DNA of 64,000 nucleotides from Zancudomyces culisetae HAW-14-8 (taxonomy: Eukaryota > Fungi > Kickxellomycota): the NCBI GenBank assembly GCA_052426225.1, contig JBNJNM010000012.1:434001-498000 (forward strand), read 5' to 3'. The notes under the pieces are model-generated. The model was not told the origin of the DNA. It did no database searches and was given only the letters and a program-made list of their open reading frames with translations. Position numbers and translations under genes: made by a program. Below are positions 10,908 through 62,661 of this stretch, one piece after another (within the stretch, counting starts at the first letter, position 1; each line of letters begins with the position of its first letter).

Positions 10908-13900
10908 ATGAGTGCTCTCCTAAAAAATGTCTCAGCATTTGGAGTTAGGGGCACAGTAAATCAGGGGGCAAGGAGGCTTCAAGCACAAGTACAGTGCAAA
11001 TCGCGACATAAAATTACGAGCTTTCATTCCTTGCAGCAAGGTTCGATCCATGCAGGTAGAATTTTGAACATTTCTACGAATTACTACAGCACTAAAAATG
11101 CAGTGAAAGAAAAGAAAGATAAAGGGGAGAATGACTATTCCAAAACAATGTTTTTACCAAAGACTGCGTTTGCTTTGCGAGCAAATGCAGCAGTAAGAGA
11201 GGCCGAGTTCAGAAAAGCTTGTGCAGAAGATTTATACTTTTGGCAATTAAAAAAAAATCCAGGAGATTACTTTGTACTTAATGACGGACCACCATATGCC
11301 AATGGAGATCTTCATTTTGGACATTTCACCAACAAGGTCCTTAAAGATATCGTGAATAGGTATCACATAGTAAAAGGGCGAAAGGTATTGTACATCCCAG
11401 GGTGGGATTGTCATGGGCTTCCGATTGAACACAAGGTTGTGAGCATGCTCAAAGCAAAAAAGGAGTCGTACAACATAGATCGGGTGCGAAAAGAGGCTAA
11501 AAAGTTAGCGTTGAATACAGTCAAACAGCACAAAAAAGAGTTTAAAAACTGGGGCATAGTTGGTGATTGGGACAATAGTTATAAAACATTGGATGTAGAC
11601 TATGAGATACGGGAGTTGAAGGTATTTAGAGAAATGGTTCGCCAAGGACTAATAAAAAGAGAGAATAGTCCAGTGTACTGGTCACCCTCATCAAATACAG
11701 CCCTGGCAGAGTCTGAACTAGAGTATAATGATAAATATGAAAGTAAAAGCGCATATATTAGATTTGAAGCAAACAATGCAAACGGCGAGCTAGACAGAGT
11801 ATTTGGCAAGAACCTGCGTGGAAAAAAGGTGAGCTATCTGGTGTGGACAACTACACCGTGGACATATGTGGCGAATAAAGCAGTTGCAGTCAGCGAAAGT
11901 AGTGAATACGTTCTTGCTCAACCAAGAGACAAGGATGAATACTTTGTAGTGGCAGCAGAACTTGTGGAAAAGCTAAATATGGTACTACACTCAGAGCTAA
12001 ATGTGATATCAGACCAAATAATGGGTCAAAGACTGGTAGGGTTAAGCTATCTACATGGATTTACAGGAGAAATGCATCCAATAATAGCAAGTAAGTATGT
12101 GGTAATGGAAAAGGGTACTGGGCTTGTTCATACAGCGCCAGGACACGGGAAAGAGGACTTTGAGGTATGTAAAGAGCATGGGATAGGTCCATATTCACCA
12201 GTCGATGGAGAAGGCAGATTCACAGAAGACGTAGGTGCCGAATATGCGGGAAAGTTTGTTCTAGGTGAAGGAAACGAAATGTTGCTGGATTATTTAAAAA
12301 CGAATGATCTGTTGGTACAAACAATGAAAATAGTTCATAGTTACCCAATCGATTGGAGAACAAAGCAACCGATAGTTATTCGCGCGACACCACAGTGGTT
12401 TGTAGATATCAGTGAGCTCAAGCTTAAAGCGGCGGATTTGCTCGACAAAGAAGTAGGAATAATCGTTCCTGAGAGCGGGAAGACCAGGTTAACGAACTTT
12501 GTTAAAAGCCGAAATAATTGGTGTATCTCAAGACAAAGACCGTGGGGTACGCCGATACCGGTGTTATATGAAGAGGGGACAGACGAGCCATTAATGACGC
12601 TCGAGTCAATTGATCACATTATTGATGTGTTGTCAAAAAACGGGGGTAGTGAAGCATGGTTCAGTATAAAAGACGAGAATGCTTTTATAGCACCTATGTA
12701 TCGAGAGAGTCTCAAAGAAAGCGGCAAGAAATATTATAGAAAAAATGATACGTTGGATGTATGGTTTGACAGCGGAACTTCGTGGACAATGTTACAAGAA
12801 AGACTGAGAGCGGTAGCCGGGGACAACGAAAAGGTGGTGGATAGGGTAGCAGATGTGTACTTGGAAGGAAGTGATCAGCATCGTGGATGGTTCCAATCCT
12901 CATTGGTTTTGAGTACAGCAGTTGAGGGAAGATCGCCATTCAAAGTACTGTATACACATGGATTTTTGCTTGACGAAAAGGGAGAAAAGATGTCAAAATC
13001 CATTGGTAATGTAATTTCACCAATGGAATATATTAATGGAAAAGTCATAAAACAGCTATCAAGCGAAGAAAAAAAGGGCGGAAACATAGTGATACCAGCA
13101 TACGGCGTGGATGTTCTCAGGTTGTGGGTAGGACTGCACGATACTACAACAGATGTAATGATAGGTCCACAAATAATATCTATAGTATCTCAACAAATGC
13201 GCAAGCTGCGTGGTGCTATCAGGTTTATACTTGGTAATCTGCACAAATTCGATGTTAACACACACAAGGTAAAATATGAAGATTTATCAAACCCATTGGA
13301 TAGATACATGCTAGACAGGTTGCAAGTGGTTATGAGCGAGATCGTTGGAAATTACAATGGGTATATGTTTTACAAGGGGATGCAATCGCTATTTAGGTTT
13401 TTGAACACTACATGTTCGGCACTGTATTTCGATGTGGTTAAGGATCGATTGTATGCCGACACCTTTGACAGTGCAAGTAGACTTTCCGCGGTCACTGTGC
13501 TTTACCATATACTGAACCATATCTTGTTTGTAATATCACCAATTACACCACATTTTGCACAGGAGGTCTACCAAAGCTGCTCGAAAGTTTACCAAGATGA
13601 AATTAACCACGAAAATGAGAGTGTGTTTGGGCAATTTGACTTTTTCAAAAATAATTTGGCCGTGAATATAACAGATGATGCCTCGATAGGCCCAACGAAC
13701 AATTGGATCAATAACGAACTTGAGAACGAGTTTAATAATCTGCTGCATATCCGATCCCTGGCAAATGCATCCATCGAAACGCTTAGGACGAGCAAGTAAG
13801 TATATTTACTCTTTTTCTTTGATATATATTTTTAAATTTTTGGCTGTGTTTTTTTCTTGCGTATCCCGCTTGGGTTTGGCGAAAAAAGTGAGTATGTTAT

Positions 13901-43468: not shown

Positions 43469-45020
43469 GCGAGATTAGCTATTCTCGTGTGAGGGAATCA
43501 AATTTGTGTTTTTAGGGTGTGTGTCACTTTTTGAACATTACTGGTTTATTATACGCCTTTTTGGTGTATCCAAGCAGGAAATTAACTGATTTTTCTCCCG
43601 TTTCTATGTATTATTAGTCACTTATTATTTTAACTTCCGACGACCCCATTTTAATTTTTCTGTATTTTTGGTAATAAATTTTTTTAAAAAGGCATTATTA
43701 ATGTGGCAGTGGATAGCGGTAGGTAATGTTTATAGATCGTTTTTGAGTCATATTTATTGGTCTTATGACTCTCTGTGTCTGCGGTGCTCGTGTCGGGCAG
43801 TGTGGGTGAGCGAGTGAGAATCATATAAGTATGAGCTCCAGGGGAATGGATGTGCTTGTTTTGATGCAATCGCTGTGATCGATCAAATCGAATTGAATTG
43901 GATAGGCTGTTTACATGTGTTTGCAGTAGCCGCGCACTTTGTTCTCTATTTATGCATCTCACGTGTGGGTGTTATTACAATTTATTGCGGTTCTCATGAC
44001 TCTGAGAGGCAGTGTTATGATATTTTCCCCTCTGTTATTTTGAGCTTACTTCTGGGGGTGTGCGGCACCACTTGGATCGCTCCTAAGAGAGTATTACAAT
44101 AGTTTGGACTAGATCCAAGCACCATTTTCTTTAGACTTCGGAACCTGTCTAAATAAAAATTATCTTTTTCCACCTATAGCAAGATGGTGAATACTTTTCT
44201 TGAATATACTTGTACTGCGGTGTAGCTAATACGCTCTAAATTGGTCATTTGTATCATAGAATAAACTGGTGGAAACTACTATCGAATATTTGATTTAAAA
44301 ACTTTAGTTAAATGTATGTTAGCCCTAATAAATTATAATGTACCTAAGTATCTAGATGCCCAATTATTAGGTATTTTCTTTTTGTATACGTTTATTACCA
44401 TTTGAGACCATTTGCACTTTTATTAATCTTTTTTTTTCATCTATTAGGTTTAGATATATTAAACAAGAGGTCACAATGAATTAGGCATTCGGATAAAAAT
44501 ACGTGTATTGGGTGTTTTTATAGTTATAAGTTAAAAAATTGGTTAATATTCTTTTACGGATGCATGAATGTCATATTCCATCAGAATTAAAAGTATGTCT
44601 TTGTCATACTATGAGTAAACTGATGAGTTTATAGCAAGGACATATTATTCCTGTTCTTATACAGCACACTAATATTTCTCCTATCTCAAGATCGTGGTGA
44701 TCCGAGTTATAAATAATCAATCTATCCCGCCATTGGATACTTATGGTAACGATTATCTATTATCATGATAAACTCTAAGATTTTTTGTCTTTGACCACAA
44801 TTAACAAACGATCGGCTTTTATGTGCAATTTCCAATTCGAAACTCCGCATTGGCCAGCAAAAGAAGAATGATTCGCGCGTTTGGTAAATGGAGAATAGCC
44901 CAGAATTGTTTCGTTTATTGGTAGAACAATAAATGTTTAACACTTTATTTCCAGTTTCAATAAGAAAAAAAATAAGTTGTGCAAAAAACGGGAAATTGAG
45001 AATTCGAATTACATTTAATA

Positions 45021-46204
45021 ATGATATTGACTTCGGCTGGAAAATCGAGTGTTCAGTACACCACAAGGTTCGGCAGATGCTCCTACGGGAAAATACTCAC
45101 CATTTCGAGAAGGAATTTGGAAACAAAGGCAGAGAGTATTTTAAAGGAATGCTACTTGGTTCGAAGCGAGGGCACCGACAAAGGTACGTACAAAGTCTAA
45201 TTTTTCATTATAATTTTTTCGATCTTTCTTTTAGTTTTTTTTTGTTTATATATCAACAACTCGTTGTTCAGCAACAATTTTTGTAAATTTGGATCAAATA
45301 ATACCGGTAAAACTAGGAATAATAACACTTTGCATGGACAGACCAAAAGCTAAAAATGCAATTTCAAGGAAATTCTTAAATGAATTCAAAGAAAATTTAA
45401 AAAGTATCCGCAACGACACGTAAGTTGGTGTTTCAAATGAGTATTATCAAAAAGGAAAGCATTAGGATGAACGATAACAAAAACCAAAACCAAAACCAAA
45501 ATTCTGAATGTATTATAAATAGGGAGGCAAGGGTGCTGGTGCTGCAAAGTAAAGTTGATGGAGTGTTCTGCGCTGGTGCGGATCTAAAAGAGCGAGTATC
45601 CATGACCCAACAGGAAGTTTGGGATTTTTTATATACCCTGAAACAGACTTTTAGCGAACTCGAGGAACTACAAATACCAACAATAGCAGCACTCGATGGA
45701 GCCGCTTTCGGTGGGGGATTAGAAATGGCGCTTTCGTGTGATATGAGAGTTGCTGGCAAGAAAGGAATTCTTGGACTCACTGAAACATCGTTAGCTATAA
45801 TACCCGGCGCAGGCGGAACACAAAGACTGACAAAGCTAATAGGTGCATCAAAAGCAAAAGAATTGATATACACGAGTGCTAGAATAAATCCAGAGCTGAG
45901 CTACCAGTACGGAGTTATCAGCGACTATGTGGGTAACAACGAAAAGAGACAGATAGCAGACACCAAGGGAGTGTCAAATTCTGGATATGAATTAGCATTG
46001 GAATGGGCTCGGAGAATAGCTATGCAGGGTCCAGTTGCTGTAAAAATGGCGAAAAAGGCGATTGATATGGGAGCACACACAGACTTGAAAACAGGGTTGG
46101 GCATTGAACATCAGTGCTACACTACGGTTCTTGGTACAGAAGACCGTAATGAGGGTCTTTTGGCCTTTAAAGAAAAGAGAAAACCCATATACAAGGGCAA
46201 ATAG
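45021..46204 (+). CDS. AUH: Mitochondrial methylglutaconyl-CoA hydratase (crotonase family)
   Basis: Exons ~45021-45183, 45317-45419 (MDRPKAKNAIS) and 45522-46204. FCAGADLKER, GAAFGGGLEMALSCD, GLTETSLAIIPGAGGTQRL, EDRNEGLLAFKEKRKP. Confidence 0.88.
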
Positions 46205-46777
46205 GTATCCAATTCTACTTCAAAGTGGTAGTTTTTATTTTTGATGATAATTCATATCATAAATGCATTTGCAATAGTTTATTATTATTCTTGTTTACGT
46301 GATAATGTTACAATAAAACAAGTTGTTGGGTAAAGCACGGCCAAAGAAACGCGTTGGATCAAATTTTCTGGTACAAGCAGCCGTGCCTATCTACAGCTAA
46401 TTAGCAATTGGGTTATGGTTGAAAGGTTTAGAAGGTGGTTTAATTAGAATTTTTACGAAAAATTGAGGTTGAATAATTTTACAGTTTGTAAACAAAAAAA
46501 ATATTGTGCGGATTTTCGTTTTGTTGTATTTATATTTGTTTTGAGTATTTAAACAATATAATTAGGTTACAAGGTTCAACTCGAAAAAAGACTGAGCATC
46601 TAAAAAACGAGATAATTTATAGAAATCAATCCATTTTGTACTGCACCAAGTTTTTCTCTATAGTACCTATTACATGACTTTATAAAAGAAAAATCTTAGT
46701 AATTTTACTTTTTGAATAAAGTATAAGGATCGAACAGAATCAGTAAAACTAGCGGTAAATCAATTCCAAGCAACAAA

Positions 46778-49700
46778 ATGACAAACCACAATGTTTTTGA
46801 GGCGCCTGAATTACCGAAACAGGATAAATATAGAGAGCCTTATACGGACTATTCAAAATTCAGAGACGGTACGGGAATAGTTATTGACTATGGTACGTGT
46901 TGATTTATCTTGAGTAAATGGAAGACTTTCGTGTGTAATTCGCAACAAGTGATATAGTTGAAATAATCCATTTCCAGTAATAAATATAAAATGATTAATA
47001 AATAGGTGTTGATGTGTGCAAGGCAGGATGGAACACCGAAAATGAACCACGGCGTAAGTATCCATGAAATATATTTTTTTATATGTGTGTACATTTCATT
47101 CTCTCCATTCTTTGTACGAAGCATTCCGTATAAACAATTTTTGTAAAAAAAATAATAATAAATCTTTGAAATCTATTGAAAGTGTTATATATTTATATTA
47201 CATTTGTATTTGTGATTGTATAGTTGTATTCGAAAATATGATATCCAAGTTCAGAAACAAGAAAGGAGGTCCAGGAAATACAGTACTGGTGGGGAACGAT
47301 ATATATGTTGATTCGATTGGGTACAGCAACATCAAGACCGCTTTTGACGGGGGCTTGATTAATAACTTTGACGTTGTTGTAAGGTTTCATTCCTAATATC
47401 AGAACTTTAAAAAAGTATTTTTCAACAACCGGAGATAGGTGTATACTTTACAACTAGCTAGACAGTTGAGCAACATTGCTAACCCTGCTTGTTCATCTTT
47501 GTTAGTATTGATTAATTCTTAATATATGTGTGCAATTTAAATATTCTAGGAAAACACACTGGATTATATATTTTTGAATCTGGGAATCGAAGGAGATAAA
47601 GTGGACCATCCGATAGTAATGACAGAGCCAATATCCAACTTAACAAGCTGTAGAAAAGGTAATATGTTATTGAAAAACTGTCCGATAGTGCCCACCCTTT
47701 ATTTGTGAAACGTATTCGTTGGGAAAAGTGTGTGTATTGGAGGAAAATAAGTATGCAAAAGTCCAACAGGCCATTTATACACAAATAGGAATGAGCGAGC
47801 TGCTGTTTGAAGGATACAGAATTCCTAAAGTAGCATATGGAATTGAACCATCCTGGAATTATTGGTATAACAAACGTGCCGCAGACCCTGAAAAAACAGG
47901 ACTAATCATAGACACAGGGAGTGTGTCAACTCATTTAATCCCAGTTGTCGATGGGGTTCCACAATTGAAGGACGCCAAAAGGTACATACAATCATTATAG
48001 TTTTTATTAACTTTTTTTTTTTGGTGTATACCTCGTTATTGCTACAGTTGTTGGATTATACTAACGATCTATCGATTTATTTTTAACAAACGCGGCAAAA
48101 TAGAATAAATGTGGGAGGCAACATGTTGATTGAGACGATGATGAAATTACTACAACTCAAGTACCCAACATTCCCAACAAAGATCAATTTGTATCAGACA
48201 AAGTCACTTTTGTATGAACATGGATATTATGCAAAGGACTATCAGAGAGAAATTCAAGATATACTAAGCAGAGACAAATTGGAGAAGGAAGATCGGATAA
48301 TCCAGTTTTCATACAAGGTAAGTAGGAGTTGTAAAAAGGTTGTATGGCCAGCGACCTGACAGGTTGGAGACGGAGGGGTTGGGGGCTTTGTTTGCGCGTG
48401 GTAATACTTTTTATTAGATAAACATATTCGTACAATTAATTGTTTTTTTGGAATCCTTAGGCTATTGAGGAAAAGTCTGAGCAGGAGAAAGAGGAGCAAG
48501 CAGAGCGACGAAGAGAGAATGCCAAGAAAATGTCAGAAATAGCAGCGAGAGTTCAAAAAGAGAAGTTGCAAAGAAACATAGAGCTACTGGAGTTACTCAG
48601 AGATATCCTGGCAAACGATGACGATGATAGTCCCAGATTCAAGGTATATTATACGTGGTTTCAGCATTTACTTTTATATGCTCTATGATTTTTGTTAGAT
48701 AAAGAGAGTGTTGCAGAGACTTTAGTTTTAAATCAAAAAAACAAAACACACATATAACATTGAAAATATTAAATAGCAAGAATTAAAAAACTATGGGATA
48801 AAAACCAGGGCAGAGCTAGAAGCAGAGGCAAAAAAGGTAGAAATACGGGTAAGAAAAGCCACAGATAAGGATTTTGTAGAAACGAAGGAGCAGCCGGTAT
48901 TTGATTTGGTGGATGTGCCAGATGAACAGCTGGGACCAGAAGAACTCAAAGAAAAGCGAAAACAAAAGCTATTAAAAGCAAACATGGAGGCAAGGGATAA
49001 GTTGAGGGCGGCCAAGGAGGAGGAGAAGAGACTGTTGGAAGAGGATAGACGAAAGGATGAAGAGTTGAGAATAAATAGTTTTGAAGTATGGCTATCGCAA
49101 TTAAAGGATAAGCGGACACAGTTGGTGGATAGAATGAGGCAAAAAAGGGCTATGAAGAAGGAACTGTCGGATAGGAAGAGCGCGGCATCGCAACAGCGGA
49201 TGCGATCGATAGCTGATTTGGCAGGAGGCGAGGGCAGAGGCGATGGAGGTGGGGGTGGAGGTAATAGCGGTGGGGGTGGGGGCGTGGGAAGGGGCGGTAG
49301 CACGCGGAGACGCTACAATGCCGGGAACGGTAGGGGTGATGATGATGATGACAAGTTTGGAGAAAACGATAGTGACTGGGATATTTATTTGGACATTAGT
49401 AAAGAGGAAGGGGTGGGATCCGACGAAGAAGATATCCAGGCAGAGTTGGTACAGCTTAATGAAAAGCTGTGCCAGTACGACGCCGAATACTTGCGAAAGC
49501 TGGACGACAAAGCCAAAGACGAAATCCGATCTAGCCTGATGTACCGATATTACTACGGAAACCTCGAGCCTATACTTGACGACCCAGCACTTCCCGAGAC
49601 AAACAAAAACGGTACAGACAACGATGTTAGCAGCAGCAATGAACTGCTGGCTAGAAGTTTCCAGATGCACCTGAATGTTGAGAGAATCCGTGTTCCTGAA

Positions 49701-50111
49701 ATTATTTTTGATCCATCGATTATCGGAGTTGAACAAATGGGACTTATTGAACTGATTAGCCACATTTATCCCAAAATTGCCAGCAGCGATAGGTCAACAT
49801 CAGGCAACGGAAAAGGCACTAGAAATATATTTATAAATATGAATGGAGGAGCTGGAGTGATGGAGCCAAGTTCAATTAAAGGATTCGAGGAAAGGCTACG
49901 TGCTGAGCTGATCAAAATATGGCCGGTTGGTGACAAAATCAATATTACCACCAGTTCTTCGCCAAATGACGGTTGGAAAGGCGCCAGTTTGTGGAGCAAC
50001 TCCAAGGCTAATTGTAGTACTAGTTTTCTGACCAGAAAGATTTATGATGAGTATGGATCAGATTATTTTGTGACTAATGAGTTTTCCAACCTACGATACA
50101 GTCAGGAATAA
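46778..50111 (+). CDS. ARP5: Actin-related protein 5 (INO80 complex), multi-exon
   Basis: IVIDYG, HPIVMTEP, MSELLFEGY, MKLLQLKYPTF; Arp5-specific insert LVDVPDEQLGPEELKEKRKQKLLKA..DRKSAASQQRMRSIADLA..DDKFGENDSDWDIY; HLNVERIRVPEIIF. Confidence 0.92.
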
Positions 50112-50507
50112 TATTTGGCTCGCTTTTTCTTTTTTTTTACTTTCATTGTGTCTAACATTTGTTTGAATATTTGCATTCTCAATAACAACAAATAACAAAT
50201 AACAAGTAATAGTTTTAGTAATAGCAATAGTAATTGGTGTTGGTGTTGGTATTGGTTTTGGTGTTGTTGGTAACCTATTTCTTAGTTTATTTTACAATTT
50301 GGTAAGATTTTAATTACTAAAAATAGTAGTAGTTATCATCAACCTAGTTCCACATAGAGAATAGTTAATGTATTTGTGTCATACATGATCACAAATAAAT
50401 CGTATATAAAAAGTGAGATATTGATATGTAAAAAAGAAAATAATAATGGGGATATAAAATAAAGCGCGAAAAAAAAAACAAAATAAAACATAATAAAACA
50501 TATTCAG

Positions 50508-53500
50508 TTATTCTTTTTCATCCAACAATTTGGCTATCAGATCTGAAATCTCATCAGTCTTTGGTGCGCTTGAGGCTGACATTCCAGCACCCACACTAGC
50601 ACCAACCATACTAGGCACCAACGCCGCCGCAAAACTGAACCCACCCTGGCTTGCAGAGATACCACCATTGGCCCTCTTTTTGTCTCCCTTAGAACCGAGT
50701 CCAAGCTTGAGCTTAGACAACATGCCAGATGAGCTTCCATTATCAGCGTCTTGACCACCTGGGAGACCTAGGTTTATGTCTTGTTTTGGACGATACTTGA
50801 GTAGCTTGTTGTAGTAATACTCAGTATCTTTACTACTCTCAACAGCTCTAGCAGTTAGTTTTTGTTGGAGAGCCGAAGGCGAACCAGCAACAGCTCCACC
50901 AGATAAGGTTTTTACCAGCTGATTCGCTTTAATATCCTCAGGACTGTCCTTTGGTAGCTCGGCCACTACACGTAAAATAGCCTCCCGCTGTTTTTGTTGA
51001 TGACCACTGGGTGACATACCCTTCTTAGCCATATCACCGTGGTATGCGCTTCCATTTTGCTTGTCAGAAGCACGACCACCACCTTCTTTTGAGGCTTTTC
51101 TAGACCGGAGAGACAGAATATTTGTGGATCGGAGTCTTCCACCTCTAACCATAGATAAGAATGCCAGTTGTCGTTGAACAGTTTGAGCTGGTGGCTCCCA
51201 ATACATTTGATCCTGTTCTCGGTAAACATCTTGTGACACAATTGGAAGCATCCACCACAACCATCTGTTAGGAAGGACGCGCAAAACCAAACCAACAGGC
51301 AAAGTGATTGCTGCAACACCTATACAGTACAACCACATTATGGGAGTAATCTTTGTAGTACGGAAGACTACACCACCATAGGTAACTATAATGGCCTGTA
51401 TAATTGCACTACTGACTACAACCGCAATGAAAATGTTGTTTTTGAGAATACCACGGAAACAATTAATCTGAGATCCAAGAACTCTGCTGTTAAACTCGTT
51501 AAATAGTTGCATAAATACAAAGGTGTTATAAGTAATCGTTTTCAACACTTTGATGTCTGTCGGGTTGCTATTATCAAGCCCAAATATATTATCCCCAATA
51601 TAAAAGGTAAAGAAGGTGACTCCAATTTGAAACAGAGCTTGGCCAAATATGTTTTTCCACATATTAAAAGTAATGAGAGGCGCATCTGGCAATTCCGGAA
51701 ACCTATTTAATAGATCAGGTGATGGTGGGTCCGTTGCTAACGCCAATGCTGCAAGTGTGTCCATGATTAGATTCAGCCACAACAGTTGAACTGAGGTAAA
51801 CAGCGACTCTCTGTCTTCACTAGTAACACTTGTAATGAACGCAATAAAGACAGCGGTTATATTGACAGTCAACTGAAATTGAAGGAATTTCTTAACCGAG
51901 TCATTGACACATCTTCCCCATATCAACGCACTCACAATCGAAGTGAAGTTATCGTCCATCAATATAATGTCAGAAGCCTCTTTTGCTATCTCTGTCCCAC
52001 TCATACCCATACTGAATCCTATATTTGCTGCTTTAAGTGCTGGTCCATCGTTAGTTCCATCGCCAGTTGCTGCAACTACATTTCCATTCTCTTTCAACCA
52101 ATTAACCAAAACCCGCTTGTCTTCAGGACTTGAGCGTGACAAAACTTGCAATCTCGGTACCACTACTTTCATCTCTTCTGGCGACAGCTTCCTAAAGTGC
52201 CGCCCCTCAAGAATAACTCCACCCAGTTCAGGTGTATATATTCCACATTGCTTGGCTATGGCCTTTGCTGTCAACAAGTTATCTCCGGTAACCATTCTAA
52301 CCATGATTCCAGCACGCTGACAATGATTTACTGCAGCTGTCACACCGTCACGAAGTGGGTCTTCAATTCCAAACACACCTAGCCATGTCATTCCATCGGT
52401 ACTTTTAATTACATCATCACTATCTGTTGAGTCCATGTCGATGTCATGGATGTCTTTGATATCAACATATGCAAGTCCAATTGTTCTCAGCGCCTGCGAC
52501 GCATACCTTTCAATAATTCCTTCGATACGTTCAATCTCTTGATTGTCCATCTGAGTTACTGGTATACTCTCTCGTGTATCCTCAGTACTATCCGCACTCT
52601 CCTGTAAGTACCCACCACTGACATTCAAGATCTTTGTACACCCTTTCAACAATACTTCCGGCGCACCTTTAATGTATAATCTATAGAATTCTGTGTCATC
52701 TTTGGGATCTACTAACTTTACCAACACACTCATTGATTTTTTCAGCGAGCTGAATGGATAAACCGAAACAGTATCGGACTCTTCCCTTCGCTTGATGACG
52801 TCTGTGAATCCCATTCGCTGTGCCCATTGTAAAAGCGCCACCTCTGTACTTGACCCTGTAAATGAATCCACCTTTCTACCAGTTCCGTGGTCATCAGTCG
52901 CAGTTATTTTCAACTCTTCGTCGTTCTTTGCAGTATCCTTCCTCTTTTTTGGAAGTAGCCCCTCAAACACAGATTTTCTTTTTTCACCTTCTGGTTTTGT
53001 CTTGGAGTCCTCTACAGCCATGGTAAATGCTGTGCTGTTTACTGCTATCGCGTTGGTAATCAACTCCAGAGTATGCGCTGGTACTTTTCCTTCAAACTCA
53101 TGAAACCCTACCTCGGTGCTCTCTGATTCTATTCCTTTTAAAGTCGCATTGTCCAGTGACATGCCTGTGTTCTTTTCTCCAGGCATAGCTTTCATGGTAT
53201 CCTTTGGATATACTTTGAACCCAACACCATTTCCTACTGTACCTGCAACTACCGTCATAACATTTTGAGTTAATGTTCCCGTTTTATCTGAACAAATTGT
53301 TGTGGCATTTCCCATTGTTTCACATGCCGCTAGCTGTCGAACCAAACAATTGTCCTTAAGCATACGCACCGTTGCCACTGCTAGCGTAAGTGTAACTGCT
53401 AGTGGTAACCCCTCGGGTATCGCTACTACTATAATGGTCAATGTCTCAATAATAATGGCAATCAATGCACCAATAATGGAGCTCGCATCTCTCGGGACTA

Positions 53501-54728
53501 TGTTTTTTATCAGTTGTAAAACATACTTAAGAAGAAGAATCAAAAGCATAAGAACTGCAGCAACACCACCAATTACTGCTATTACTTCAGCAAGCACATT
53601 TAATTTTTCTTGAAGAGGTGTGGCCTCGTCTTCAGTCCTAAACGACATCATTATTCTTCCATGTGATGAATTTTCTCCAACTGCAACTACCACACATTCT
53701 CCAATACCATTCACAATAAGACTTCCTGAAATCAAAAACGGATCAGTGTGTCTAATAATATCATGCTTTTTCTTTGCCTCCGCACTTTCAAGGATTTCGC
53801 CGTTTTCTTCGGCAACAGCTTTCTTGTACTCTTGTTCTTCAGCCTCCTTGGCCTCCAATTCCTCAAGAGTCAATTTTCTAACTGGATCACTTTCACCTGT
53901 AACCGAACTCTCATCCGCCTCCAAATTCGAACCGCTTATCACAATAGCATCTGCACACAATACATCTCCTGCCTCAACATGTAGAATATCTCCAACCATT
54001 ACACAGTTGACTGAAACTCCTTGTTTTGTTCCATTTCGTGTCACGTACACTGTACGATCTTGTTTTTTGTTGTTAAGTTTTTTGAACTGTTTTTCTTTTT
54101 GAAAATCATTAACGGACGAGACTAAAACTACACCCAACACTGCTACTAGAATTGAGAATCCTTCTATCCAATTCAATCCTGTATCTGGATCATCATCTTT
54201 TCCTGTGACGTCTTGATATATTCCTAGTGCTAGCGATACGGTTGCCGCAATACATAAGAGTATAATCATCTTATCATTCAGTGCTATCAATAATACTTGG
54301 ATAAACGATTTGGGTTTTTCTTGTGGTATATAATTGATACCAAACTCTTTGATTCTAGTCTCGAATGTGGTTTGTAGCTTTTCAAGCTCATCAACCCATT
54401 CAAGCTCGCCCTTCTGGTAGCTTGTCCCTACCTTGACAGCCGCTATCGTACCTCTTGGCCTCTCTTTCGCTATTTCATGTTCGTACTCCTTTGCGAAATC
54501 AATCGGGTTTGTCCACTCCCCACTAGGGATTTGCTCTGGTACTAATGTAGTGAGACCAAATTTCTCGTCAGTTCGCAATCCCTTGACTAATGATTGTGTT
54601 CCTCCAAGAATTTTAAATGTATTAAATTCCTTGTGTGCTACCATTTTAGATAGCACACTCCTATTAATCCTTATCTCTCCATCATCGCCCGTGCTATTCG
54701 AGCCTTTGAAGCCCATGGATACACTCAT
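50508..54728 (-). CDS. PMC1: P2B-type (PMCA-like) vacuolar Ca2+-ATPase, intronless
   Basis: DESSVTGES, VVAIPEGLPLAVT, CSDKTGTLT (phospho-Asp), KGAPE, VTGDN, TGDGTNDGPAL, QFQLTVNITAV, QLLWLNLIMDTLAALALAT. Confidence 0.95.
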   Translation of the reverse strand: MSVSMGFKGSNSTGDDGEIRINRSVLSKMVAHKEFNTFKILGGTQSLVKGLRTDEKFGLTTLVPEQIPSGEWTNPIDFAKEYEHEIAKERPRGTIAAVKVGTSYQKGELEWVDELEKLQTTFETRIKEFGINYIPQEKPKSFIQVLLIALNDKMIILLCIAATVSLALGIYQDVTGKDDDPDTGLNWIEGFSILVAVLGVVLVSSVNDFQKEKQFKKLNNKKQDRTVYVTRNGTKQGVSVNCVMVGDILHVEAGDVLCADAIVISGSNLEADESSVTGESDPVRKLTLEELEAKEAEEQEYKKAVAEENGEILESAEAKKKHDIIRHTDPFLISGSLIVNGIGECVVVAVGENSSHGRIMMSFRTEDEATPLQEKLNVLAEVIAVIGGVAAVLMLLILLLKYVLQLIKNIVPRDASSIIGALIAIIIETLTIIVVAIPEGLPLAVTLTLAVATVRMLKDNCLVRQLAACETMGNATTICSDKTGTLTQNVMTVVAGTVGNGVGFKVYPKDTMKAMPGEKNTGMSLDNATLKGIESESTEVGFHEFEGKVPAHTLELITNAIAVNSTAFTMAVEDSKTKPEGEKRKSVFEGLLPKKRKDTAKNDEELKITATDDHGTGRKVDSFTGSSTEVALLQWAQRMGFTDVIKRREESDTVSVYPFSSLKKSMSVLVKLVDPKDDTEFYRLYIKGAPEVLLKGCTKILNVSGGYLQESADSTEDTRESIPVTQMDNQEIERIEGIIERYASQALRTIGLAYVDIKDIHDIDMDSTDSDDVIKSTDGMTWLGVFGIEDPLRDGVTAAVNHCQRAGIMVRMVTGDNLLTAKAIAKQCGIYTPELGGVILEGRHFRKLSPEEMKVVVPRLQVLSRSSPEDKRVLVNWLKENGNVVAATGDGTNDGPALKAANIGFSMGMSGTEIAKEASDIILMDDNFTSIVSALIWGRCVNDSVKKFLQFQLTVNITAVFIAFITSVTSEDRESLFTSVQLLWLNLIMDTLAALALATDPPSPDLLNRFPELPDAPLITFNMWKNIFGQALFQIGVTFFTFYIGDNIFGLDNSNPTDIKVLKTITYNTFVFMQLFNEFNSRVLGSQINCFRGILKNNIFIAVVVSSAIIQAIIVTYGGVVFRTTKITPIMWLYCIGVAAITLPVGLVLRVLPNRWLWWMLPIVSQDVYREQDQMYWEPPAQTVQRQLAFLSMVRGGRLRSTNILSLRSRKASKEGGGRASDKQNGSAYHGDMAKKGMSPSGHQQKQREAILRVVAELPKDSPEDIKANQLVKTLSGGAVAGSPSALQQKLTARAVESSKDTEYYYNKLLKYRPKQDINLGLPGGQDADNGSSSGMLSKLKLGLGSKGDKKRANGGISASQGGFSFAAALVPSMVGASVGAGMSASSAPKTDEISDLIAKLLDEKE

Positions 54729-57700
54729 TTTCTAAGCTAATACCTGGTGACTTTTTGAAAGTCTTACTATTATGATTTTTGTTCTCTCGAACTAAACTCG
54801 TGAAAAGTCGCTAATTGCAGGGCGTTTGCCTTTTATATAGCAATTATTCAAAAAAAAAATTCCTTGGCAGCGTAAACACCGTTATGGTTGTTTGTCTAGT
54901 ATCAATTGGTTATGATTCAGTAACCGGCTACTACTACAAAGATTTTTTGATATTATTGCCTATTTTAATTTTAAGCTGGTTTAGTAAATTGCCAATAGAT
55001 ATGTTTTGATGGCTAGAAATCATAGGTTTAGAACAAATAGTGTAAAACTATCTGTTGCAAAGGTAAACACGTTACAATATAAGCCAACCAATCCTCAATT
55101 ATCTTTGAAAACTCTTCAAAAATAATACCTTGATTGTCTTTTTCTTTTCTCTCTACATCATTATATTTTGTCTGTTAATTCCCAACGCTTTTGATAATCG
55201 TTCTCTTGTGATTGCGTTGATTTAAGGCAATGGCATCCCGTAATTTTAAAATACATAAATAAAAACATCAGCTCCTCTTGTTTAATTGGTACAAGCTGAG
55301 GTAATTCAAAGCAAGTCTTTTTTCAAAGACGTCATTGGAGGGGGAGAATAAAATTTCCATGTTAATATTGTATGTTATTGTGGAAGGCTTCTTATAGATG
55401 CCCAGCCAGATTGGCTTTGTTTATTCTTTTTGTCACACCAATTTGAGATGTGTCACGATCTCATATCAAATACACGACTTTACAATTATTAGCCTTTTTG
55501 CCAATTAAATAAAACCCATTGGCAATGACGTTTTCTGGAAATGGGTAAATTAAAATAAATCCTTGTGTAGTTTGCAAATTACAGTCAAGTAAAAGACATG
55601 TTTATGACAACTAAAATAAAATCATCACACATTCATAGCATATTTTCAACATATATCCTCCATTTCCCAAAATACTGTTTCAAAGAAACGAAAAAATTAT
55701 GCAACGCCAAGAAAGTATAAAGTAAAATACCATCAAAATGTAGATAAGGCTATAAAGTCAGTTACCTTTCAGTAATCTCTAAAAGCGCTTCTGGGAATAA
55801 CCTTCTGTTTCAATGACTATTGAGAATGTGCTATTCCGTAATCCCTGTTACTCTCTCACAACGAGTGCCGATTTATAATACTTTGATGAAATTATACCCA
55901 GTTTCTTGTAGTTTGAATAATGTTGGGTATAAAGTCGGTAATACTTTTTACTAACTCAATCTCTTTCTATCGATGCGTTTTAGCTTTACTTTGAGTTTTT
56001 TAAGTTCAACTTGGTTTGTTATTTCTATTTTTGTTTTTTATTATTATACTATGTTCATGCTAATTAATTAAATTTGGAACAGAAATAAATTGTCAACACA
56101 CCATTACAATAAAAGTCATATCATCCTTATTAATATTATATTTTCAAACATTTACAATAGTAGTCAAAATAAATTTATGAGTACAGATAAACATAGGTGT
56201 ACTTTGAAAGAGATACTTGTTTACACTTGTGGCATCTGGTATTATATTTCAAATACTTCAAATATTAAGCTAATATTGGGATCATGAAAGTCATTCTGAT
56301 GATAAACAGAACCAATTATTATTATTTTTTGATTTTTACTATTACATTAGAAATACATTGGTATCAACTAGTCGCTACACCCTATGCTTGGCGATCTTTT
56401 TTCCCTAAAGTTAAGAAATAAACGGTGTATAAAAGGTTGGGGTGGGGGAATATTTAATTAACATTTGATTACACTTCCAACAATAAACTGTTCTAATTTC
56501 TAAAAATATAAAAGAGATAAGGATTTTTTTGTAATCAACTATGGATGTAGTAATCGAGATGATCCTGGTATCATGCAATGTTGCTATACGTGCTTTATAA
56601 TTTTAATCACCCAAGCAAGTAGGAACTATTTTTTTTTTGTGCAAAGCCAGCCTCATATACCACAATTGGTTCGTTAGTCTGTTCAACCAATACGAGCTAA
56701 AAATTAGTACATGTGGATTCATTTGAAAGCAGTAAAAAACTTTATTGGCAAAAATCAATTATTGATCTTAGGCAACACGCCTCCTTAAACACATATAATT
56801 TTCTCCTGGCCAGTACATACAAAATGGTTCGTGGATAAAAATGGTATTATGTTCAATAGGCTTCAAGCATCAATGAATTGTGTTTCATAGTTATTGTTGC
56901 AGTACTTTTTTTATTATTACGTATGATTTTGTATGACTAGTGGCTTTAATGTTTTCATAAGGTCGAACACTAAAGTATAATATGAGCTAATCTAATTCAA
57001 AATAAATAATACACAACTCTTGTAAACAAATCTTACAGCATATACTTGGTACTGTAGATGATAAATTGATTTTTTAATATTTTTCTACAATGTACAAATC
57101 AGATATAATATACAGGGAGTAAAAACTGAAAAGTAAATACATAGTCTTTGAACTAATTCCACAGTACGTTTGTATTGGTACTTTAGGGTATAAGCAATCG
57201 CTGAATAGATATTACCTAATTATGTAGGGCTATCAAGTATCTTTTTTGTAACCAAATAGAAATGTTATAGAGGTGTATTATGATTCCCGCATGATATTTC
57301 ATTTATTGTTCAATTTTAGTACTTGATAGTTATGGTATTTAACACGAATAGATTCGAATTAAATAACTGCTGACTGAGGAGTTACAATCTTCGTGAATAC
57401 AAAGTTTTTCTGTAGAAATCACCAGCAGTCCACCATGATGTTGAGTCTATTTACATTTCACATCATCAATTTATTTTTGATTTATATGTATTTGATTGAT
57501 ATATTCTTTTATATCATTTAAACTAGACTAATTCCATGAACAAGGCAAAATGAAAAAGAGTAAATAGCTCAAACTATTGTAAAAAATATACAAGGTGGGG
57601 TATTCTATTCCAGAAAGTTACCATTTTGATGTATATCTATGTTTCTAGATTTTTGCTTAATTCCCCCTTCCCCTTCATTATTCCTCTTCTCCTCCCCCAC

Positions 57701-58144
57701 AAGCAAAGTGGGAGTATGCTTTAACTCCTCATTTAGAGATTCTGTAAATACAATATTGGCACACGCCCTAATAAAAATGATTTGCTGAAAAAGCATAATA
57801 AAAACACATTGGATGATTGTAATCAAGCCAAAACCTATCAATTAGTTGTGTTAATGTGAAAGTTTAATGAGAATTAGCGAAATTATATTTTGTTTACTCA
57901 TTATACAGCTTTTTTTAAAGCTATACACAGGTTTTTAGCTAATTTAATTTGGAATCAACTTGAACAAACCAAATTGAAATATTTTGATTAGTAATATTTT
58001 TAATTTACTGGTCAGTTTTTTAATACAAAACCAAAAATAAAGTAGCGAAAGCGGTTCTTAAAAATAACGGTCTATAATTATATTATTACAAAATATACCT
58101 AGCGAGATCACAAAGGAACAACATATAAAAAGCAGAGTTAAAAG

Positions 58145-59284
58145 ATGCCGTACGTAGATGCCCCAAAAACACAAATTGAAGCTGGAGATTTAAATCCGAA
58201 CATTTTAATCGTTTCGGCGCAAAAGGAAACGATCATTGTAAAAACCCTTGTGGATGGAGTAGTCGATGGTCTCACAAAAGCTGGTGTTGCTAAATCAAAT
58301 ATTCACTTTGAAAATGTAACAGATCCTGCCCTGATTCCTCAAGAGACAAAAAAAATACTTCTGCAAAGCAGAGAATGCGCTGATGGACAGATCAGTGAGT
58401 TGGGAGCCAATAGAGCATATCTAAACGTAGAACATGTTTACAAGTACGATGCAGTGATTTGTGTTGGAATATTTATTGAAGAGGAAGAAAAATCGGGAGA
58501 ATTTGACGCAAAGTGCGAGAAATCATATAATGAGGTTCATGAAATTATTCTCGAAACCAATGTACCATGTATTTTGGGAATTTTGACCTGTATTAACTAC
58601 GAACAAGGATTGGAAAGGGCCGGAATAGGTAGAGTAGAAAAGGGAGCTAATCATGGATACTTTTGGGCTACAGCAGCTCTTTCTGAAATTAAGACAAGAA
58701 AAATGTTTTGTGAAGGTGAATCTGACACTGAAATCACGAAAGCCTTTACAGAAAATGTCACTCAGCACAATATTTCTAAACAACCAAACGTTGCAATTTT
58801 GTGTGCACAATGGAATATGGAAATAAATAGCGAGATCTTATTGGGAATTGCAAATGAAATGATCAACTCAGGTGTGAACCCAGAGAATGTAAAGGTATAT
58901 AGCGCAGCAGGATCCTATGAACTACCAGGTCTTGCAAACTACATTATTGAAGTATCCAGAACAAGAGATTATGAGGCTCATCTTACCAAAATTCAACAGG
59001 GTTCTGGAAAAGCACCATCGCCTGTGGATGCAGTGGTGTGTGTAGGCTCGCTCATAAAAGGTGGAACAAAACACTTCAAGTACATTAAGGATGCCGCCGA
59101 AGTTGCCATAGCAAACATTGTTTACAATAACAAGGCTGTATGCGAATCTGCGATTTTATGTTGCAAAAATATGGACGAAGCAAAGCAATTCGCGGGATTA
59201 GGCAGCGAAAAAGCAGGTGAATCTTCAATGAATATTGGTCCATCTATTGCAAGAGTTGTTTTGAAAAAACTAAATTTAGTTTAA
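58145..59284 (+). CDS. RIB4: Tandem two-domain 6,7-dimethyl-8-ribityllumazine synthase-like protein (RIB4/RibH duplication), intronless
   Basis: Two DMRL-synthase repeats: aa ~18-186 (..YDAVICVG..PCILGILTC..EQGLERAG..NHGYFWA) and aa ~213-379 (VAILCAQWN..GSYELP..VDAVVCVGSLIKGGTKHFKYI). Confidence 0.88.
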   Translation: MPYVDAPKTQIEAGDLNPNILIVSAQKETIIVKTLVDGVVDGLTKAGVAKSNIHFENVTDPALIPQETKKILLQSRECADGQISELGANRAYLNVEHVYKYDAVICVGIFIEEEEKSGEFDAKCEKSYNEVHEIILETNVPCILGILTCINYEQGLERAGIGRVEKGANHGYFWATAALSEIKTRKMFCEGESDTEITKAFTENVTQHNISKQPNVAILCAQWNMEINSEILLGIANEMINSGVNPENVKVYSAAGSYELPGLANYIIEVSRTRDYEAHLTKIQQGSGKAPSPVDAVVCVGSLIKGGTKHFKYIKDAAEVAIANIVYNNKAVCESAILCCKNMDEAKQFAGLGSEKAGESSMNIGPSIARVVLKKLNLV

Positions 59285-62137
59285 TATTTACCTGATTCAG
59301 TTTTACCAAATTTTTATTTTATGGAAAAATATGTCCTAGATAAAATAATTTATTACAACCTATAAACATAGTAAAGTAGGGATTACAATATATCATAATG
59401 GCTGTAATAAAAATATGTTAATAAAAAAGTAAATGGGTTGACTCGAATAATCAAACATCTGATTCTCAGTCTATTTAATAGAGAACCTGTTAAAATGTTA
59501 ATCTCATCATCCATTAAAATTTTTTATCGATTCACTAGTTATTGAGTGGTAATATGTACTATATCGATGCTTTATAATTAGAATATAGTCAGTGTATATA
59601 ACATATCATTTTTTTAAGAATATTTAAAATCTTATAAATCTTATAAATATTACAAGCTATTACACTTGTTAAACAACTAGAATTATACAAAATTCACTAA
59701 ATATTATGAATATCTAACTATTTTAATATTGTATCATTTTCAATCCAGTCACATTCTGATTGAAGTGAAAAAAAAACCCAATATCTAAAAATAGTTTGAA
59801 TAGATACTAAAACAAATGTTAATGTATAGTGAAAAAACAAATTGTTAGTGAGTTAATTATGTGCATGGGTGCATATCCTTTCTTTTGACATGAAAAGAAC
59901 TCCAACTGGAATTAGGGTTGGTAAAGCGAGTTAAGAAAAGTAGATAATAAAGATTGCTTTTAGTAAAAAGAATTGTCAATGTTTGTAAGTAGAGATACAG
60001 TTATATGAATTATTAGGTAGTTACTAATTAATATTATTGAAATAAAATAGAAAGTAGACCATTGGCACTGAATAAAAAACAAAATCATTAGTAAACTGTC
60101 AGATTTCAGATTTGTTTTCAATGGAAATAATTGTTTTCGAGAATATTTTTGTCAGAATAGATTTATTAATATGAATAGTAATAAAGTATAAAAGTCACTA
60201 AGAATAAGCACTAGAAAGTTAAAGGGATCAACTAATATTGTTAATCTGCTTAGCCGTTTCCTTCGAGTAAAAGAGATGTATTTATATCGTCGAGTTGCTT
60301 CTGTTTTCACCGATGAACCCTCTTCGTTTGAAATGGTTCTTTTGACATCAAGGTTCATTGAATTTTGGCGTCAATTTCCTTCTTTTCCTGAAAAGTCTAT
60401 TGAAAGTTTGTGAATAAAACTTGTTGAATGATTTTAGTTCTATTCAAAGATCTTTTCAATAGGAGATGTTAGGGAATCCTAACATAAACGATCATACATC
60501 ATTTTGTACAAAAAATTAAAAGGTAAGATTAAAAATGCGAAAAATTACAAATGTGTAATGTTGATAATAAACTATATATCATAAAATTTCAATCAAAGGA
60601 TAGCTGAGTTTGGTATGGTTTATTTGCAGTTATCAAAGGTTATATTATCTCTAGTTAGTTTAGTATGAAATGTTTAAACTAGTATCGTAACTAGTATAAA
60701 GATAGATAACGAAGTAAATAAAATATATTAATCATTAAAAACAATCAAAGTATAGTTAAAATATGAAATAGACTGGTTTATAATTATAACAGCTAACTAT
60801 TTCTAATTTACTGTGTTATATTAATATTTGGTATTAGACAGTTGATGAAATATACAAGCTAATAAAATATTTAGATAATGTGAGGTGAATTTAAATAACA
60901 CTCATGATCTTTATACGCAGACCTAGGATCACTAAACATTTCCGTTTTGCTGTTTGGAGTAATTATATAAAATGCTAACATTAAGAAGAAAATTACAAAA
61001 AGCTAAAAAGCTAGTATCTAGTAAAATAAATTAATATTTTCACCAATTAATAAGTACTAGTTATCACAATTTCTAACATAATATATAATACAGTTAATTA
61101 CCACCAAAAAATCAGAGACAATAAATCAATCGCCAACACCACAATTTTAACTGAAACAAGTTTGTGATTATCTAAAAAACGGCTCACAACTTAAACCAAG
61201 ACCGCATAATACCATCATGAAATGTATATCACAATTATAAAAATAGGAAAGTAAATATATAAATTGAGGTGAATATAAAACTATGATATAAAAATAAAAA
61301 ACAAACGAAGGATTACAACACACCTACATATATGAGACGCAACACTCATCGAGGGACAGACAATGTTTGGAAATACGGAGGCATCGTCTAGTTTCTTATT
61401 CTCATTATCTTTATTATTCGTAATAAAATATTTAATAGTTTCATCATATTATGATTAGTTTAATAAATAGTACCCACAATAAAAAAATAAACTGAAAACA
61501 TCATTAGAATTAAATACAGAAACAAATACAGAATGGTTGGAATAAATATGGCACTAACCAACCTCGGTTAATTTGATAATGTTAATGTATTATATTGTAG
61601 ATATTATAGTTTATCAAATATAATTTTCAGCTAATGTGATGGCTGAGTTAGATATAAAACTGATTATGTCAGTAATACTCAGGTCGTGGATCACTTCACT
61701 TTTCTGATTGCCATCATACGAATTTTCGAACTTATTTACTATTGAATAATAATAATAAACACCAGGTAAACTAAATCAATTAATAATTACTAGAAGTACT
61801 AGATATTTATATAAAAGTATATGAAAGTATATTCAGTTAAGAAAGAATAAAGATGTTTCTTTTTGTAGTCACATATCTCTATATTCGGTTTTCTATTAAC
61901 TTTATTGTATTCTATCGTTTTAACTATTGATCGTGTTTGCTCGCATTGGTGATTATCATACGTTCAGGAATCGCAATTGATTCGCAGAAAACAAAATCTA
62001 GCTGTTATACTACATTACAATATCAAACTAAATAATAAAAAGTTATTCGTGTATATTTAAATTGCTACTATTGGTAGTAGTTGAAGTTAAGTAAAACTTA
62101 ATTCGCTAAGAAATAGTAATTAAATAATAAAAAGTGT

Positions 62138-62151
62138 AAAAAAATTAAAAA
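62138..62151 (-). terminator. RNA polymerase III oligo-dT terminator of tRNA-Tyr
   Basis: TTTTT then TTTTTTT on the minus strand, starting a few nt after the discriminator. Confidence 0.75.
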
Positions 62152-62154
62152 GTT

Positions 62155-62235
62155 TCCGAGAACCCGGATTTGAACCAGGGACCTAGAGATAAAAGTTAAC
62201 TACAGTCTCCCGCTCTACCGCTGAGCTATTCTCGG
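62155..62235 (-). tRNA. tRNA-Tyr(GTA) with 9-nt intron
   Basis: Minus strand: CCGAGAA TA GCTC AGCGGTA GAGC G GGAGA CT GTA G [TTAACTTTT] A TCTCT AGGTC CCTGG TTCAAAT CCGGG TTCTCGG A. All stems pair; C1-G72 and A73 are eukaryotic Tyr identity elements; A and B boxes are present. Confidence 0.95.
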
Positions 62236-62242
62236 TTATGAT

Positions 62243-62661
62243 TGTTAACTTTCGACCCTTTTCTGCTAGTAGTCGTAGTTATTCGTATTTAGTTGGTTTA
62301 AAATTTAATAGAAAAGTTAATTATCTACTTGTTTTGTTCGAAACTCTAACTAACTATTAAGACTTGCTTATTATTTTGGTTATTATTCTTTATTTTTTAT
62401 TGCTAAAAAGTTGTTATCCTAAAAGTTATTCTTCCAAACTATAAATAAAATTTATATATAAACTATTTTTTTTCCATCTATTTTGTTATCTCAATTTTTT
62501 TGTGTTATCAATTTTTGTTTTGTAATTTCTTGGCTCATTAAAAAAACCCAAATTGTTAGGGAAAAAAGAGTCCAATTTTTCCACTAATTTTAATATAGTA
62601 ATTTATCAGAATTGACTTTGTCAATTCGTATTTTTTATAATATATAATTAATTATGCAACA
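62243..62661 (-). repeat. Putative 3' LTR (~419 bp), TGTT...AACA termini
   Basis: Starts TGTTGCATAA at 62661 (minus), 3 nt after the PPT at 62674-62665. Candidate end ..GTTAACA at 62243. Internal TATATATAAA (~62460-62451) and AATAAA (~62394-62389). The distal boundary is inferred, since other TGTT sites exist. Confidence 0.6.

What the first reader, a model, noticed from the sequence alone, without database searches (positions are those of the whole stretch)
58145..59284. Single-chain tandem lumazine synthase with reciprocally split active site
Seen: the 379-aa ORF is two lumazine synthase repeats, each degenerate in the opposite half. Domain 2 keeps the pyrimidine-stacking aromatic (AQW223N), the ribityl-binding G256SYE259LP and the phosphate loop plus catalytic His (IKGGT308KH310F). 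It lacks the conserved Arg (EAKQF349AG in place of EQA.xRAG) and NHG..W (MNIGPSI). Domain 1 lacks the first set (AQK27E, VTDPALIP, IEEEEKSGEF) but keeps PCILGILTC, EQGLER158AG and NH170GYFW174. Established: lumazine synthase active sites lie between neighbouring subunits; one gives F/W22, GxxE58, T86 and H88 and the other gives R127 and K135/H (B. subtilis numbering). Inference: internal duplication followed by face-specific subfunctionalisation, so that only the D2/D1 interface is catalytic and the two outer faces are dead or repurposed. I do not recall this architecture being described.
Basis: partly seen in the sequence, partly recalled or inferred. Interest (0 to 1): 0.92.

Follow-up and report, generated by a model that had tools for sequence, protein, structure and literature searches.

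The report
Two-domain lumazine synthase, one shared site
Insect-gut fungi (Harpellales) appear to have replaced the five-subunit ring of a vitamin B2 enzyme with one protein made of two copies, each keeping only its half of a single shared active site, an arrangement I found no description of for this enzyme.

Summary
Observation confirmed. The 379-aa intronless ORF is two lumazine synthase (LS) repeats, and it is the only LS in a genome that has the other four riboflavin pathway genes searched. The tandem is conserved in five Smittium species and Furculomyces, under purifying selection (dN/dS 0.10 in the one unsaturated pair); sister fungal orders have single-domain LS. The split is family-wide. 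Of 18 pyrimidine/ribityl/phosphate-loop columns, 15 are invariant in repeat 2 and 1 in repeat 1; of 14 Arg127-side columns, 13 are invariant in repeat 1 and 2 in repeat 2. New here: the ring-contact flanks of helix alpha3 have become polar on each repeat's dead side. This favours a non-ring, single-site pseudo-dimer (about 0.62) over an even-membered ring with the site in trans (about 0.22). Activity, expression, oligomeric state and pocket geometry were not tested. An unrelated eukaryote encodes RibB-RibA-(LS)x5 with a similar Arg-donor-only repeat, probably by convergence. No paper describing a tandem LS was found. The scan noted the same gene's second copy on another contig (s1-676022). New variant of a known kind.

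The parts
58145..59284 (+). Intronless gene for a 379-aa tandem lumazine synthase (RIB4)
   Evidence: orthologues are single ORFs
58145..58165 (+). N-terminal arm, residues 1-7, invariant in all orthologues; aligns to the N-terminal arm of single-domain fungal LS. Inferred to pack on repeat 2 at the live interface
   Evidence: role from own knowledge; not resolved in the AlphaFold models
58199..58501 (+). Repeat 1, degenerate half (res 19-119): fold kept, W22/N23, G55/E58 and T86/H88 equivalents lost
   Evidence: dN/dS 0.18
58478..58501 (+). Phosphate loop of repeat 1 replaced by an acidic run (res 112-119); acidic at the R83-equivalent position in all orthologues; this motif occurs in 1 of 262 ordinary LS
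58502..58711 (+). Repeat 1, conserved Arg-donor half (res 120-189) with T148, Q154, R158 (=R127), N169-H170-G171 (H=K135) and W174
   Evidence: dN/dS 0.03
58712..58786 (+). Linker, res 190-214, with invariant S193-D194 before a predicted helix 196-202; length conserved (W174 to W223 distance 48-57 aa); the N-terminal-arm motif is not kept
58787..59098 (+). Repeat 2, conserved pyrimidine/ribityl/phosphate-loop half (res 215-318): W223, N224, G256, E259, S302, G306, T308, H310, Y313, I314
   Evidence: dN/dS 0.07
59099..59281 (+). Repeat 2, degenerate half (res 319-379): R127 replaced by F/Y/H/S/L, F113 by S, H135 by I/V; positions 101 and 105 polar
   Evidence: dN/dS 0.18

Best explanation
This is the Harpellales lumazine synthase (RIB4). 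An ancestral fungal RIB4 was duplicated inside one reading frame. Both repeats keep the LS fold and pack like two neighbours of the ancestral pentamer. Repeat 2 supplies the pyrimidine-stacking Trp, the ribityl-binding GSxE loop and the phosphate loop with Thr/His; repeat 1 supplies the essential phosphate-binding Arg, the NHG..W segment and probably the N-terminal arm. One site condenses aminoribitylpyrimidinedione with DHBP. The two outer faces lost both their catalytic residues and their hydrophobic ring contacts, so the chain most likely works as a self-contained pseudo-dimer (site in cis, no five-fold ring). Shown: two domains, reciprocal conservation, selection, sole LS of the genome, polar outer faces. 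Inferred: activity, shared pocket, cis geometry, non-ring state.
For: Sole LS in a genome with RIB1, RIB3, RIB5 and a RibD_C match. Reciprocal conservation in six species matches the published subunit split, F21/F59/T79/I81/T85/H87 against R126'/K134'/E137' (PMC2935281). dN/dS is 0.03 and 0.07 on the live halves and 0.18 on each dead half. Helix alpha3 is reciprocally made polar: repeat 1 turned Y91, I92, A95 and G99 equivalents mostly into K/E/D/Q/S, and repeat 2 turned M101, L105 and F113 polar and has K/D/E at 90/94/97. R108, on that same flank, is a published contact within the pentamer (PMC9529111). In a five-repeat chain that should still close a ring, positions 95 and 99 stay small in all five repeats, including catalytically degenerate ones. 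AlphaFold pTM is 0.86 and 0.91 for the single chain. A two-domain chain cannot tile a five-membered ring.
Against: No coordinates were available, so which interface the model forms is unknown, and the arm was not ordered in either model. The assignment of alpha3 flanks to ring contacts is partly inferred from a helical wheel and from the conservation pattern itself. Dead halves are still constrained (dN/dS 0.18) and carry new invariant residues (S335, K312, D316). In the five-repeat protein the motif pairing fits best if the following repeat donates the Arg, the opposite order to this gene, which would make the linked interface the dead one here. dN/dS rests on one unsaturated pair.
Confidence: 0.62

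Rival explanations
1. Same split site, but the chains assemble into an even-membered pseudo-ring (4 or 6 domains) or a swapped dimer with alternating live and dead interfaces; the live site may form between chains.
For: All known LS are oligomers (PMC7369331). The linker (about 25 aa) is similar in length to the repeat 4-5 linker of the five-repeat protein, where that junction looks like the dead one. The acidic loop of repeat 1 and invariant K312 of repeat 2 could replace the phosphate bridge at a dead interface.
Against: Hydrophobic and small contact residues are replaced by charged ones on both dead faces, mostly acidic on both sides in the C-terminal half of alpha3. Repeat 2 has lost the N-terminal arm motif. 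K312 can be explained by an i,i+4 pair with invariant D316.
Confidence: 0.22
2. One live site as above, but the acidic dead face of repeat 1 has been repurposed as a docking surface, for example for riboflavin synthase (substrate channelling), or as an assembly blocker under positive selection.
For: Repeat 1 has net charge -6 to -16 in all orthologues. The same acidic-loop replacement appears in repeat 4 of the unrelated five-repeat protein and in only 1 of 262 controls. A basic tail of riboflavin synthase mediates LS binding in Aquifex (PMC7369331).
Against: The acidic loop varies in sequence and length between species; no partner evidence was obtained.
Confidence: 0.1
3. The protein has changed function, for example to an archaeal-type riboflavin synthase or a non-catalytic lumazine or flavin binder.
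For: Long stem branches and new invariant substitutions at the live site (D138 to F, R21 to Q, M87 to K). Pentameric riboflavin synthase is an LS paralogue.
Against: The genome has an ordinary RIB5 and no other LS; the DHBP-phosphate residues R158, T308 and G306 are invariant; best fold matches are fungal LS (Z 19.2, against 12.1 for the archaeal riboflavin synthase).
Confidence: 0.04
4. Misassembly or fusion of two pseudogenes.
For: Such artefacts exist: P0009 is a 456-bp, 100% identical repeat on a 1.8-kb contig.
Against: Intact single ORFs in seven other assemblies of six species, two intact copies in this genome, dN/dS 0.10, and repeats only 27% identical.
Confidence: 0.01

Closest known systems
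Pentameric fungal lumazine synthase Rib4 (S. cerevisiae 1EJB, C. glabrata 4KQ6, S. pombe 1KYV), PF00885 / TIGR00114
   Same: Best sequence and fold matches; same fold in both repeats; every site motif is present once across the chain; fungal-type LTC..EQ.L.RAG and NHG..W.
   Different: One domain of 150-225 aa carrying both half-sites and forming a C5 ring with five sites. Here: two repeats per chain, one complete set of site residues, and polar outer faces.
Other LS assembly states: Brucella decamer, T=1 and larger capsids, archaeal pentameric riboflavin synthase
   Same: Same fold; active sites at subunit interfaces (PMC7369331, PMC13151069).
   Different: All are built from homopentamers of single-domain subunits; neither review passage read describes a fused or asymmetric form.
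Tandem-fused 4-oxalocrotonate tautomerases, natural and engineered (PMC9306753)
   Same: Gene duplication plus fusion lets neighbouring subunits diverge independently and changes the oligomer's symmetry.
   Different: Different fold; the parent is even-membered (hexamer to trimer), so fusion keeps the assembly. LS is odd-membered, so a two-repeat chain must abandon or resize the ring.
RibB-RibA-(LS)x5 gene of an unnamed eukaryote (L012, ENA ERZ25333236), found here, undescribed as far as searched
   Same: Tandem LS repeats with partitioned site residues; repeat 4 is Arg-donor-only with an acidic phosphate loop; repeat 5 lacks the Arg.
   Different: Five repeats, which could close a pseudo-pentamer; repeat 3 is complete; small contact residues are kept; the repeats score lower on Harpellales profiles than ordinary LS do, so probably convergent.

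Membership tests
Lumazine synthase (PF00885, TIGR00114) | DMRL_synthase profile match above cut-off | tested here: met
   Pfam 137.6 bits whole, 71.6 and 75.4 per half. TIGR00114 117.4 whole against cut-off 84.6, but each half alone is below it, 55 and 69.
Lumazine synthase (PF00885, TIGR00114) | Flavodoxin-like alpha/beta/alpha LS fold | tested here: met
   Model pLDDT 83-89 with four strands per repeat; repeat 1 matches 4KQ6 at Z 19.2, rmsd 2.3 over 158 residues.
Lumazine synthase (PF00885, TIGR00114) | Full set of site residues (F/W22, G55/E58, T86, H88, R127', K/H135') available to one interface | tested here: inconclusive
   All present once per chain and invariant; spatial meeting could not be measured because no coordinates are returned.
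Lumazine synthase (PF00885, TIGR00114) | Catalytic formation of 6,7-dimethyl-8-ribityllumazine | not testable with these tools
   Indirect only: sole LS in a genome with the other pathway genes searched.
Canonical homopentameric fungal Rib4 | Single domain carrying both half-sites | tested here: not met
   Two repeats, each lacking one half-site.
Canonical homopentameric fungal Rib4 | C5 ring with conserved alpha3 contacts on both flanks | tested here: inconclusive
   Sequence argues against it, and a two-repeat chain cannot tile five positions; oligomeric state not measurable here.
Archaeal pentameric riboflavin synthase | Closest structure is RibC-type and no alpha-type riboflavin synthase is present | tested here: not met
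   2B98 Z 12.1 and 13% identity against Z 19.2 for LS; RIB5 is present.

The most novel reading that the evidence does not exclude
The first natural monomeric, single-site lumazine synthase: the minimal catalytic unit of a pentameric enzyme captured in one chain by duplication and reciprocal loss, with a second, independent eukaryotic lineage having fused five repeats and partitioned the site residues in a similar way.
Probability: 0.55. Interest if true: 0.82.

Novelty: new variant of a known kind. Interest (0 to 1): 0.72.

Why it matters
Every lumazine synthase in the reviews I could read is a pentamer or is built from pentamers, and its catalysis is attributed to proximity and activation-entropy control at the subunit interface (PMC2935281). 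A natural chain with one interface would test directly whether the ring is needed. It gives one addressable site where the two half-sites can be mutated separately, and a natural case of duplication, fusion and reciprocal degeneration in an odd-membered oligomer. It also marks a family-wide trait of insect-gut fungi that standard annotation hides, since the databases simply name these proteins lumazine synthase. LS is a widely used protein-cage scaffold, so a symmetry-broken natural variant is of engineering interest.

Tried and rejected
2) A word-index search with repeat 2 alone found nothing, which reflects low sensitivity. 3) A JGI metagenome scan found no further orthologues. 4) Trees could not place either repeat (stems of 2.3-3.9 substitutions per site). 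One clade of both repeats, and of both with fungi, is not rejected (p-AU 0.63 and 0.57) but not shown; repeat 2 grouping with NKG-motif (mostly non-fungal) LS is unsupported, 60. Scoring the halves against fungal and NKG-type profiles was mixed. 5) A second AlphaFold run with half-domain fragments added raised pTM to 0.91, but the arm strand I hoped to read from the secondary structure did not appear. 6) An idea that E112/K312 is a charge reversal of an inter-subunit R83-D90 pair found no support in the papers I could read; D121 is more simply part of the live Arg face, so the idea is kept only inside rival 1. 7) Shared ancestry with repeats 4-5 of L012 was considered and not supported. 8) P0009 was rejected as an exact-repeat artefact. 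9) Most between-species dS values are saturated; only the S. culicis pair is usable. 10) Four literature searches found no tandem LS; most subscription papers are not searchable and Persson 1999 was not held.

Full report
Observation. The window holds a 379-aa ORF at 58145-59284 (+), alone in an AT-rich stretch. Pfam finds two DMRL_synthase stretches and each half passes the cut-off alone; TIGR00114 passes only for the whole chain. Alignments to solved fungal LS show the split directly: the N-terminal two thirds of yeast Rib4 match repeat 2 best and its C-terminal third matches repeat 1 best.

Organism and distribution. The only full-length relatives are from Harpellales: Smittium angustum, S. 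megazygosporum, S. culicis (two assemblies), S. simulii, S. mucronatum and Furculomyces boomerangus, 45-56% identical. The six whose loci I fetched are single intronless ORFs. The genome (27.09 Mb, 25 contigs) fits the Zancudomyces culisetae HiFi assembly (27.2 Mb, 26 contigs; PMC12611240); this is an inference. Kickxellales, Dimargaritales, Spiromyces, Ramicandelaber and other early-diverging fungi have ordinary single-domain LS of 165-227 aa, so the tandem is specific to Harpellales as far as sampled. A profile search of 1.84 billion representatives found no other relative of this tandem among its 150 best hits.

It is the only LS of this genome. Both the Pfam model and a fungal single-domain query find just four stretches, the two repeats of two gene copies. 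The second copy, on contig C6, lies in a block of at least 17.7 kb that is 99.4% identical and differs by one amino acid. GTP cyclohydrolase II, DHBP synthase, an intron-containing riboflavin synthase and a RibD_C match are present. The pathway therefore needs this protein. Between the two S. culicis assemblies dN/dS is 0.10 overall, 0.03 and 0.07 in the two halves predicted to be live, and 0.18 in each of the other two; all other pairs are at or near synonymous saturation with far lower non-synonymous change.

The reciprocal split. PMC2935281 states that F21, F59, T79, I81, T85 and H87 come from one subunit and R126, K134 and E137 from the adjacent one (B. anthracis numbering, one less than B. 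subtilis). It also states that only the Arg is essential, an uncharged replacement being inactive. I aligned both repeats of all orthologues to 120 single-domain fungal LS. Over 18 pyrimidine/ribityl/phosphate-loop positions, repeat 2 is invariant at 15 and repeat 1 at 1; over 14 Arg-side positions, repeat 1 is invariant at 13 and repeat 2 at 2. Repeat 2 has F, Y, H, S or L at the R127 position, so it cannot donate the Arg. Repeat 1 has no W22, G55, T86 or H88, and its phosphate loop is an acidic run. Only one pairing, repeat 2 with repeat 1, has a full set. The residue sets were chosen from structural knowledge; an unselected N-half/C-half split gives p=0.05.

Helix alpha3 lines the five-fold channel and contacts both neighbours (PMC9529111). 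In repeat 1 the positions equivalent to Y91, I92, A95 and G99, which are 94-100% conserved in single-domain LS, are now mostly K, E, D, Q or S, while the opposite flank (94, 97, 101, 104, 105) is as hydrophobic as in the ancestor or more so. Repeat 2 is the mirror image: 91, 92, 96 and 98 are hydrophobic, while 90, 94, 97, 101 and 105 are charged or polar and F113 is Ser. R108, on the flank kept by repeat 1, is a published contact to E65 of the neighbour in the pentamer, which ties that flank to the Arg-donor role. The N-terminal arm is invariant in repeat 1 and lost in repeat 2. So the dead faces lost not only catalytic residues but, by inference, their packing surfaces. AlphaFold gives a confident two-domain model (pTM 0.86 and 0.91) whose best structural matches are fungal LS. 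Coordinates are not returned, so I could not see which interface it forms.

An independent natural comparison. The second-best hit of the representative search, P0007 on a 522-kb contig of an unnamed eukaryote (L012), is RibB-RibA followed by LS repeats. Read exon by exon (8001-11388, a candidate middle exon 12845-12915, and 13032-13676), it has five repeats. Repeat 3 is complete. Repeat 4 lacks W22 and GxxE, has an acidic phosphate loop and a canonical Arg half. Repeat 5 keeps W-N and GSxE but has no Arg. The acidic motif occurs in 1 of 262 ordinary LS. These repeats score lower on Harpellales profiles than ordinary LS do, so convergence is likelier than shared origin. In this chain, which can close a five-membered ring, positions 95 and 99 stay small in all repeats, unlike Harpellales repeat 1; this supports loss of the ring here. 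It also raises a caution: its motifs pair best if the following repeat donates the Arg, the opposite order to this gene, which keeps a trans site open as a rival.

Origin. Each repeat forms a well-supported group on a very long stem. The nearest non-Harpellales rows are fungal, and a tree holding both repeats together has a higher likelihood than the free quick tree and is not rejected (p-AU 0.63), but long branches prevent proof. Internal duplication of RIB4 is the simplest account.

Mechanism and odds. A working lumazine synthase with one complete site shared by the two repeats is likely at about 0.9. Within that, I favour a cis site in a non-ring chain (0.62 overall) over an alternating even-membered ring or swapped oligomer (0.22). 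A repurposed acidic face (0.10) is compatible with either. Changed function (0.04) and artefact (0.01) are unlikely.

Novelty. Reviews list pentamers, decamers and capsids only (PMC7369331, PMC13151069), and four searches found no tandem, fused or monomeric natural LS and no paper joining Smittium or Harpellales with this enzyme; subscription literature is largely unsearchable here. Duplication and fusion with asymmetric subunits is a known principle (fused 4-OT, PMC9306753), so this is a new variant of a known kind, made unusual by the odd-membered parent ring. One unresolved lead is a 269-aa bacterial Atlas cluster that aligns over 193 residues spanning the whole model and might be a further tandem. 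Interest 0.72.

Noticed in passing
L012:8001-13676 (ENA ERZ25333236, ctg591, 522 kb; P0007 and P0294): An unnamed eukaryote encodes RibB-RibA fused to five lumazine synthase repeats (two apparent introns in repeat 4): a candidate single-chain pseudo-pentamer in which only repeat 3 has all site residues. It deserves its own follow-up.
   Followed up: partly
window 44531-62243 against G000:C6 (about 2367680-2385000, reverse strand): A block of at least 17.7 kb is duplicated at 99.4% identity (segmental duplication or uncollapsed haplotype), while RIB3 and RIB5 each match a single locus. The two RIB4 copies differ by 2 nt, one of them changing E77 to K.
   Followed up: partly
window 62243: Similarity to C6 ends exactly where an LTR-like sequence begins with TG, 7 bp upstream of tRNA-Tyr (62155-62235, minus strand). 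C6 therefore looks like the empty pre-insertion site of the neighbouring integrase-encoding retroelement, which fits tRNA-targeted insertion.
   Followed up: partly
ESM Atlas cluster, row 1: A 269-aa bacterial PF00885 cluster (95 members) aligns over 193 residues spanning model residues 2-379; it may be another tandem or an extended LS. The sequence was not retrievable.
   Followed up: no
L021 (P0009): An apparent bacterial tandem LS is an exact 456-bp repeat on a 1.8-kb metagenome contig, most likely an assembly artefact.
   Followed up: yes
window 58652-58666 and 58808-58828: New invariant residues near the predicted live site (F173 in place of the fungal Asp; Q222, M225, E226 and N228; G262 opposite Y128) suggest co-evolved tightening of the one remaining interface; untested.
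   Followed up: no
G000:C21:470625-471056: A second, weaker GTP cyclohydrolase II domain match (52 bits) in a 443-aa frame, besides the strong one on C13.
   Followed up: no
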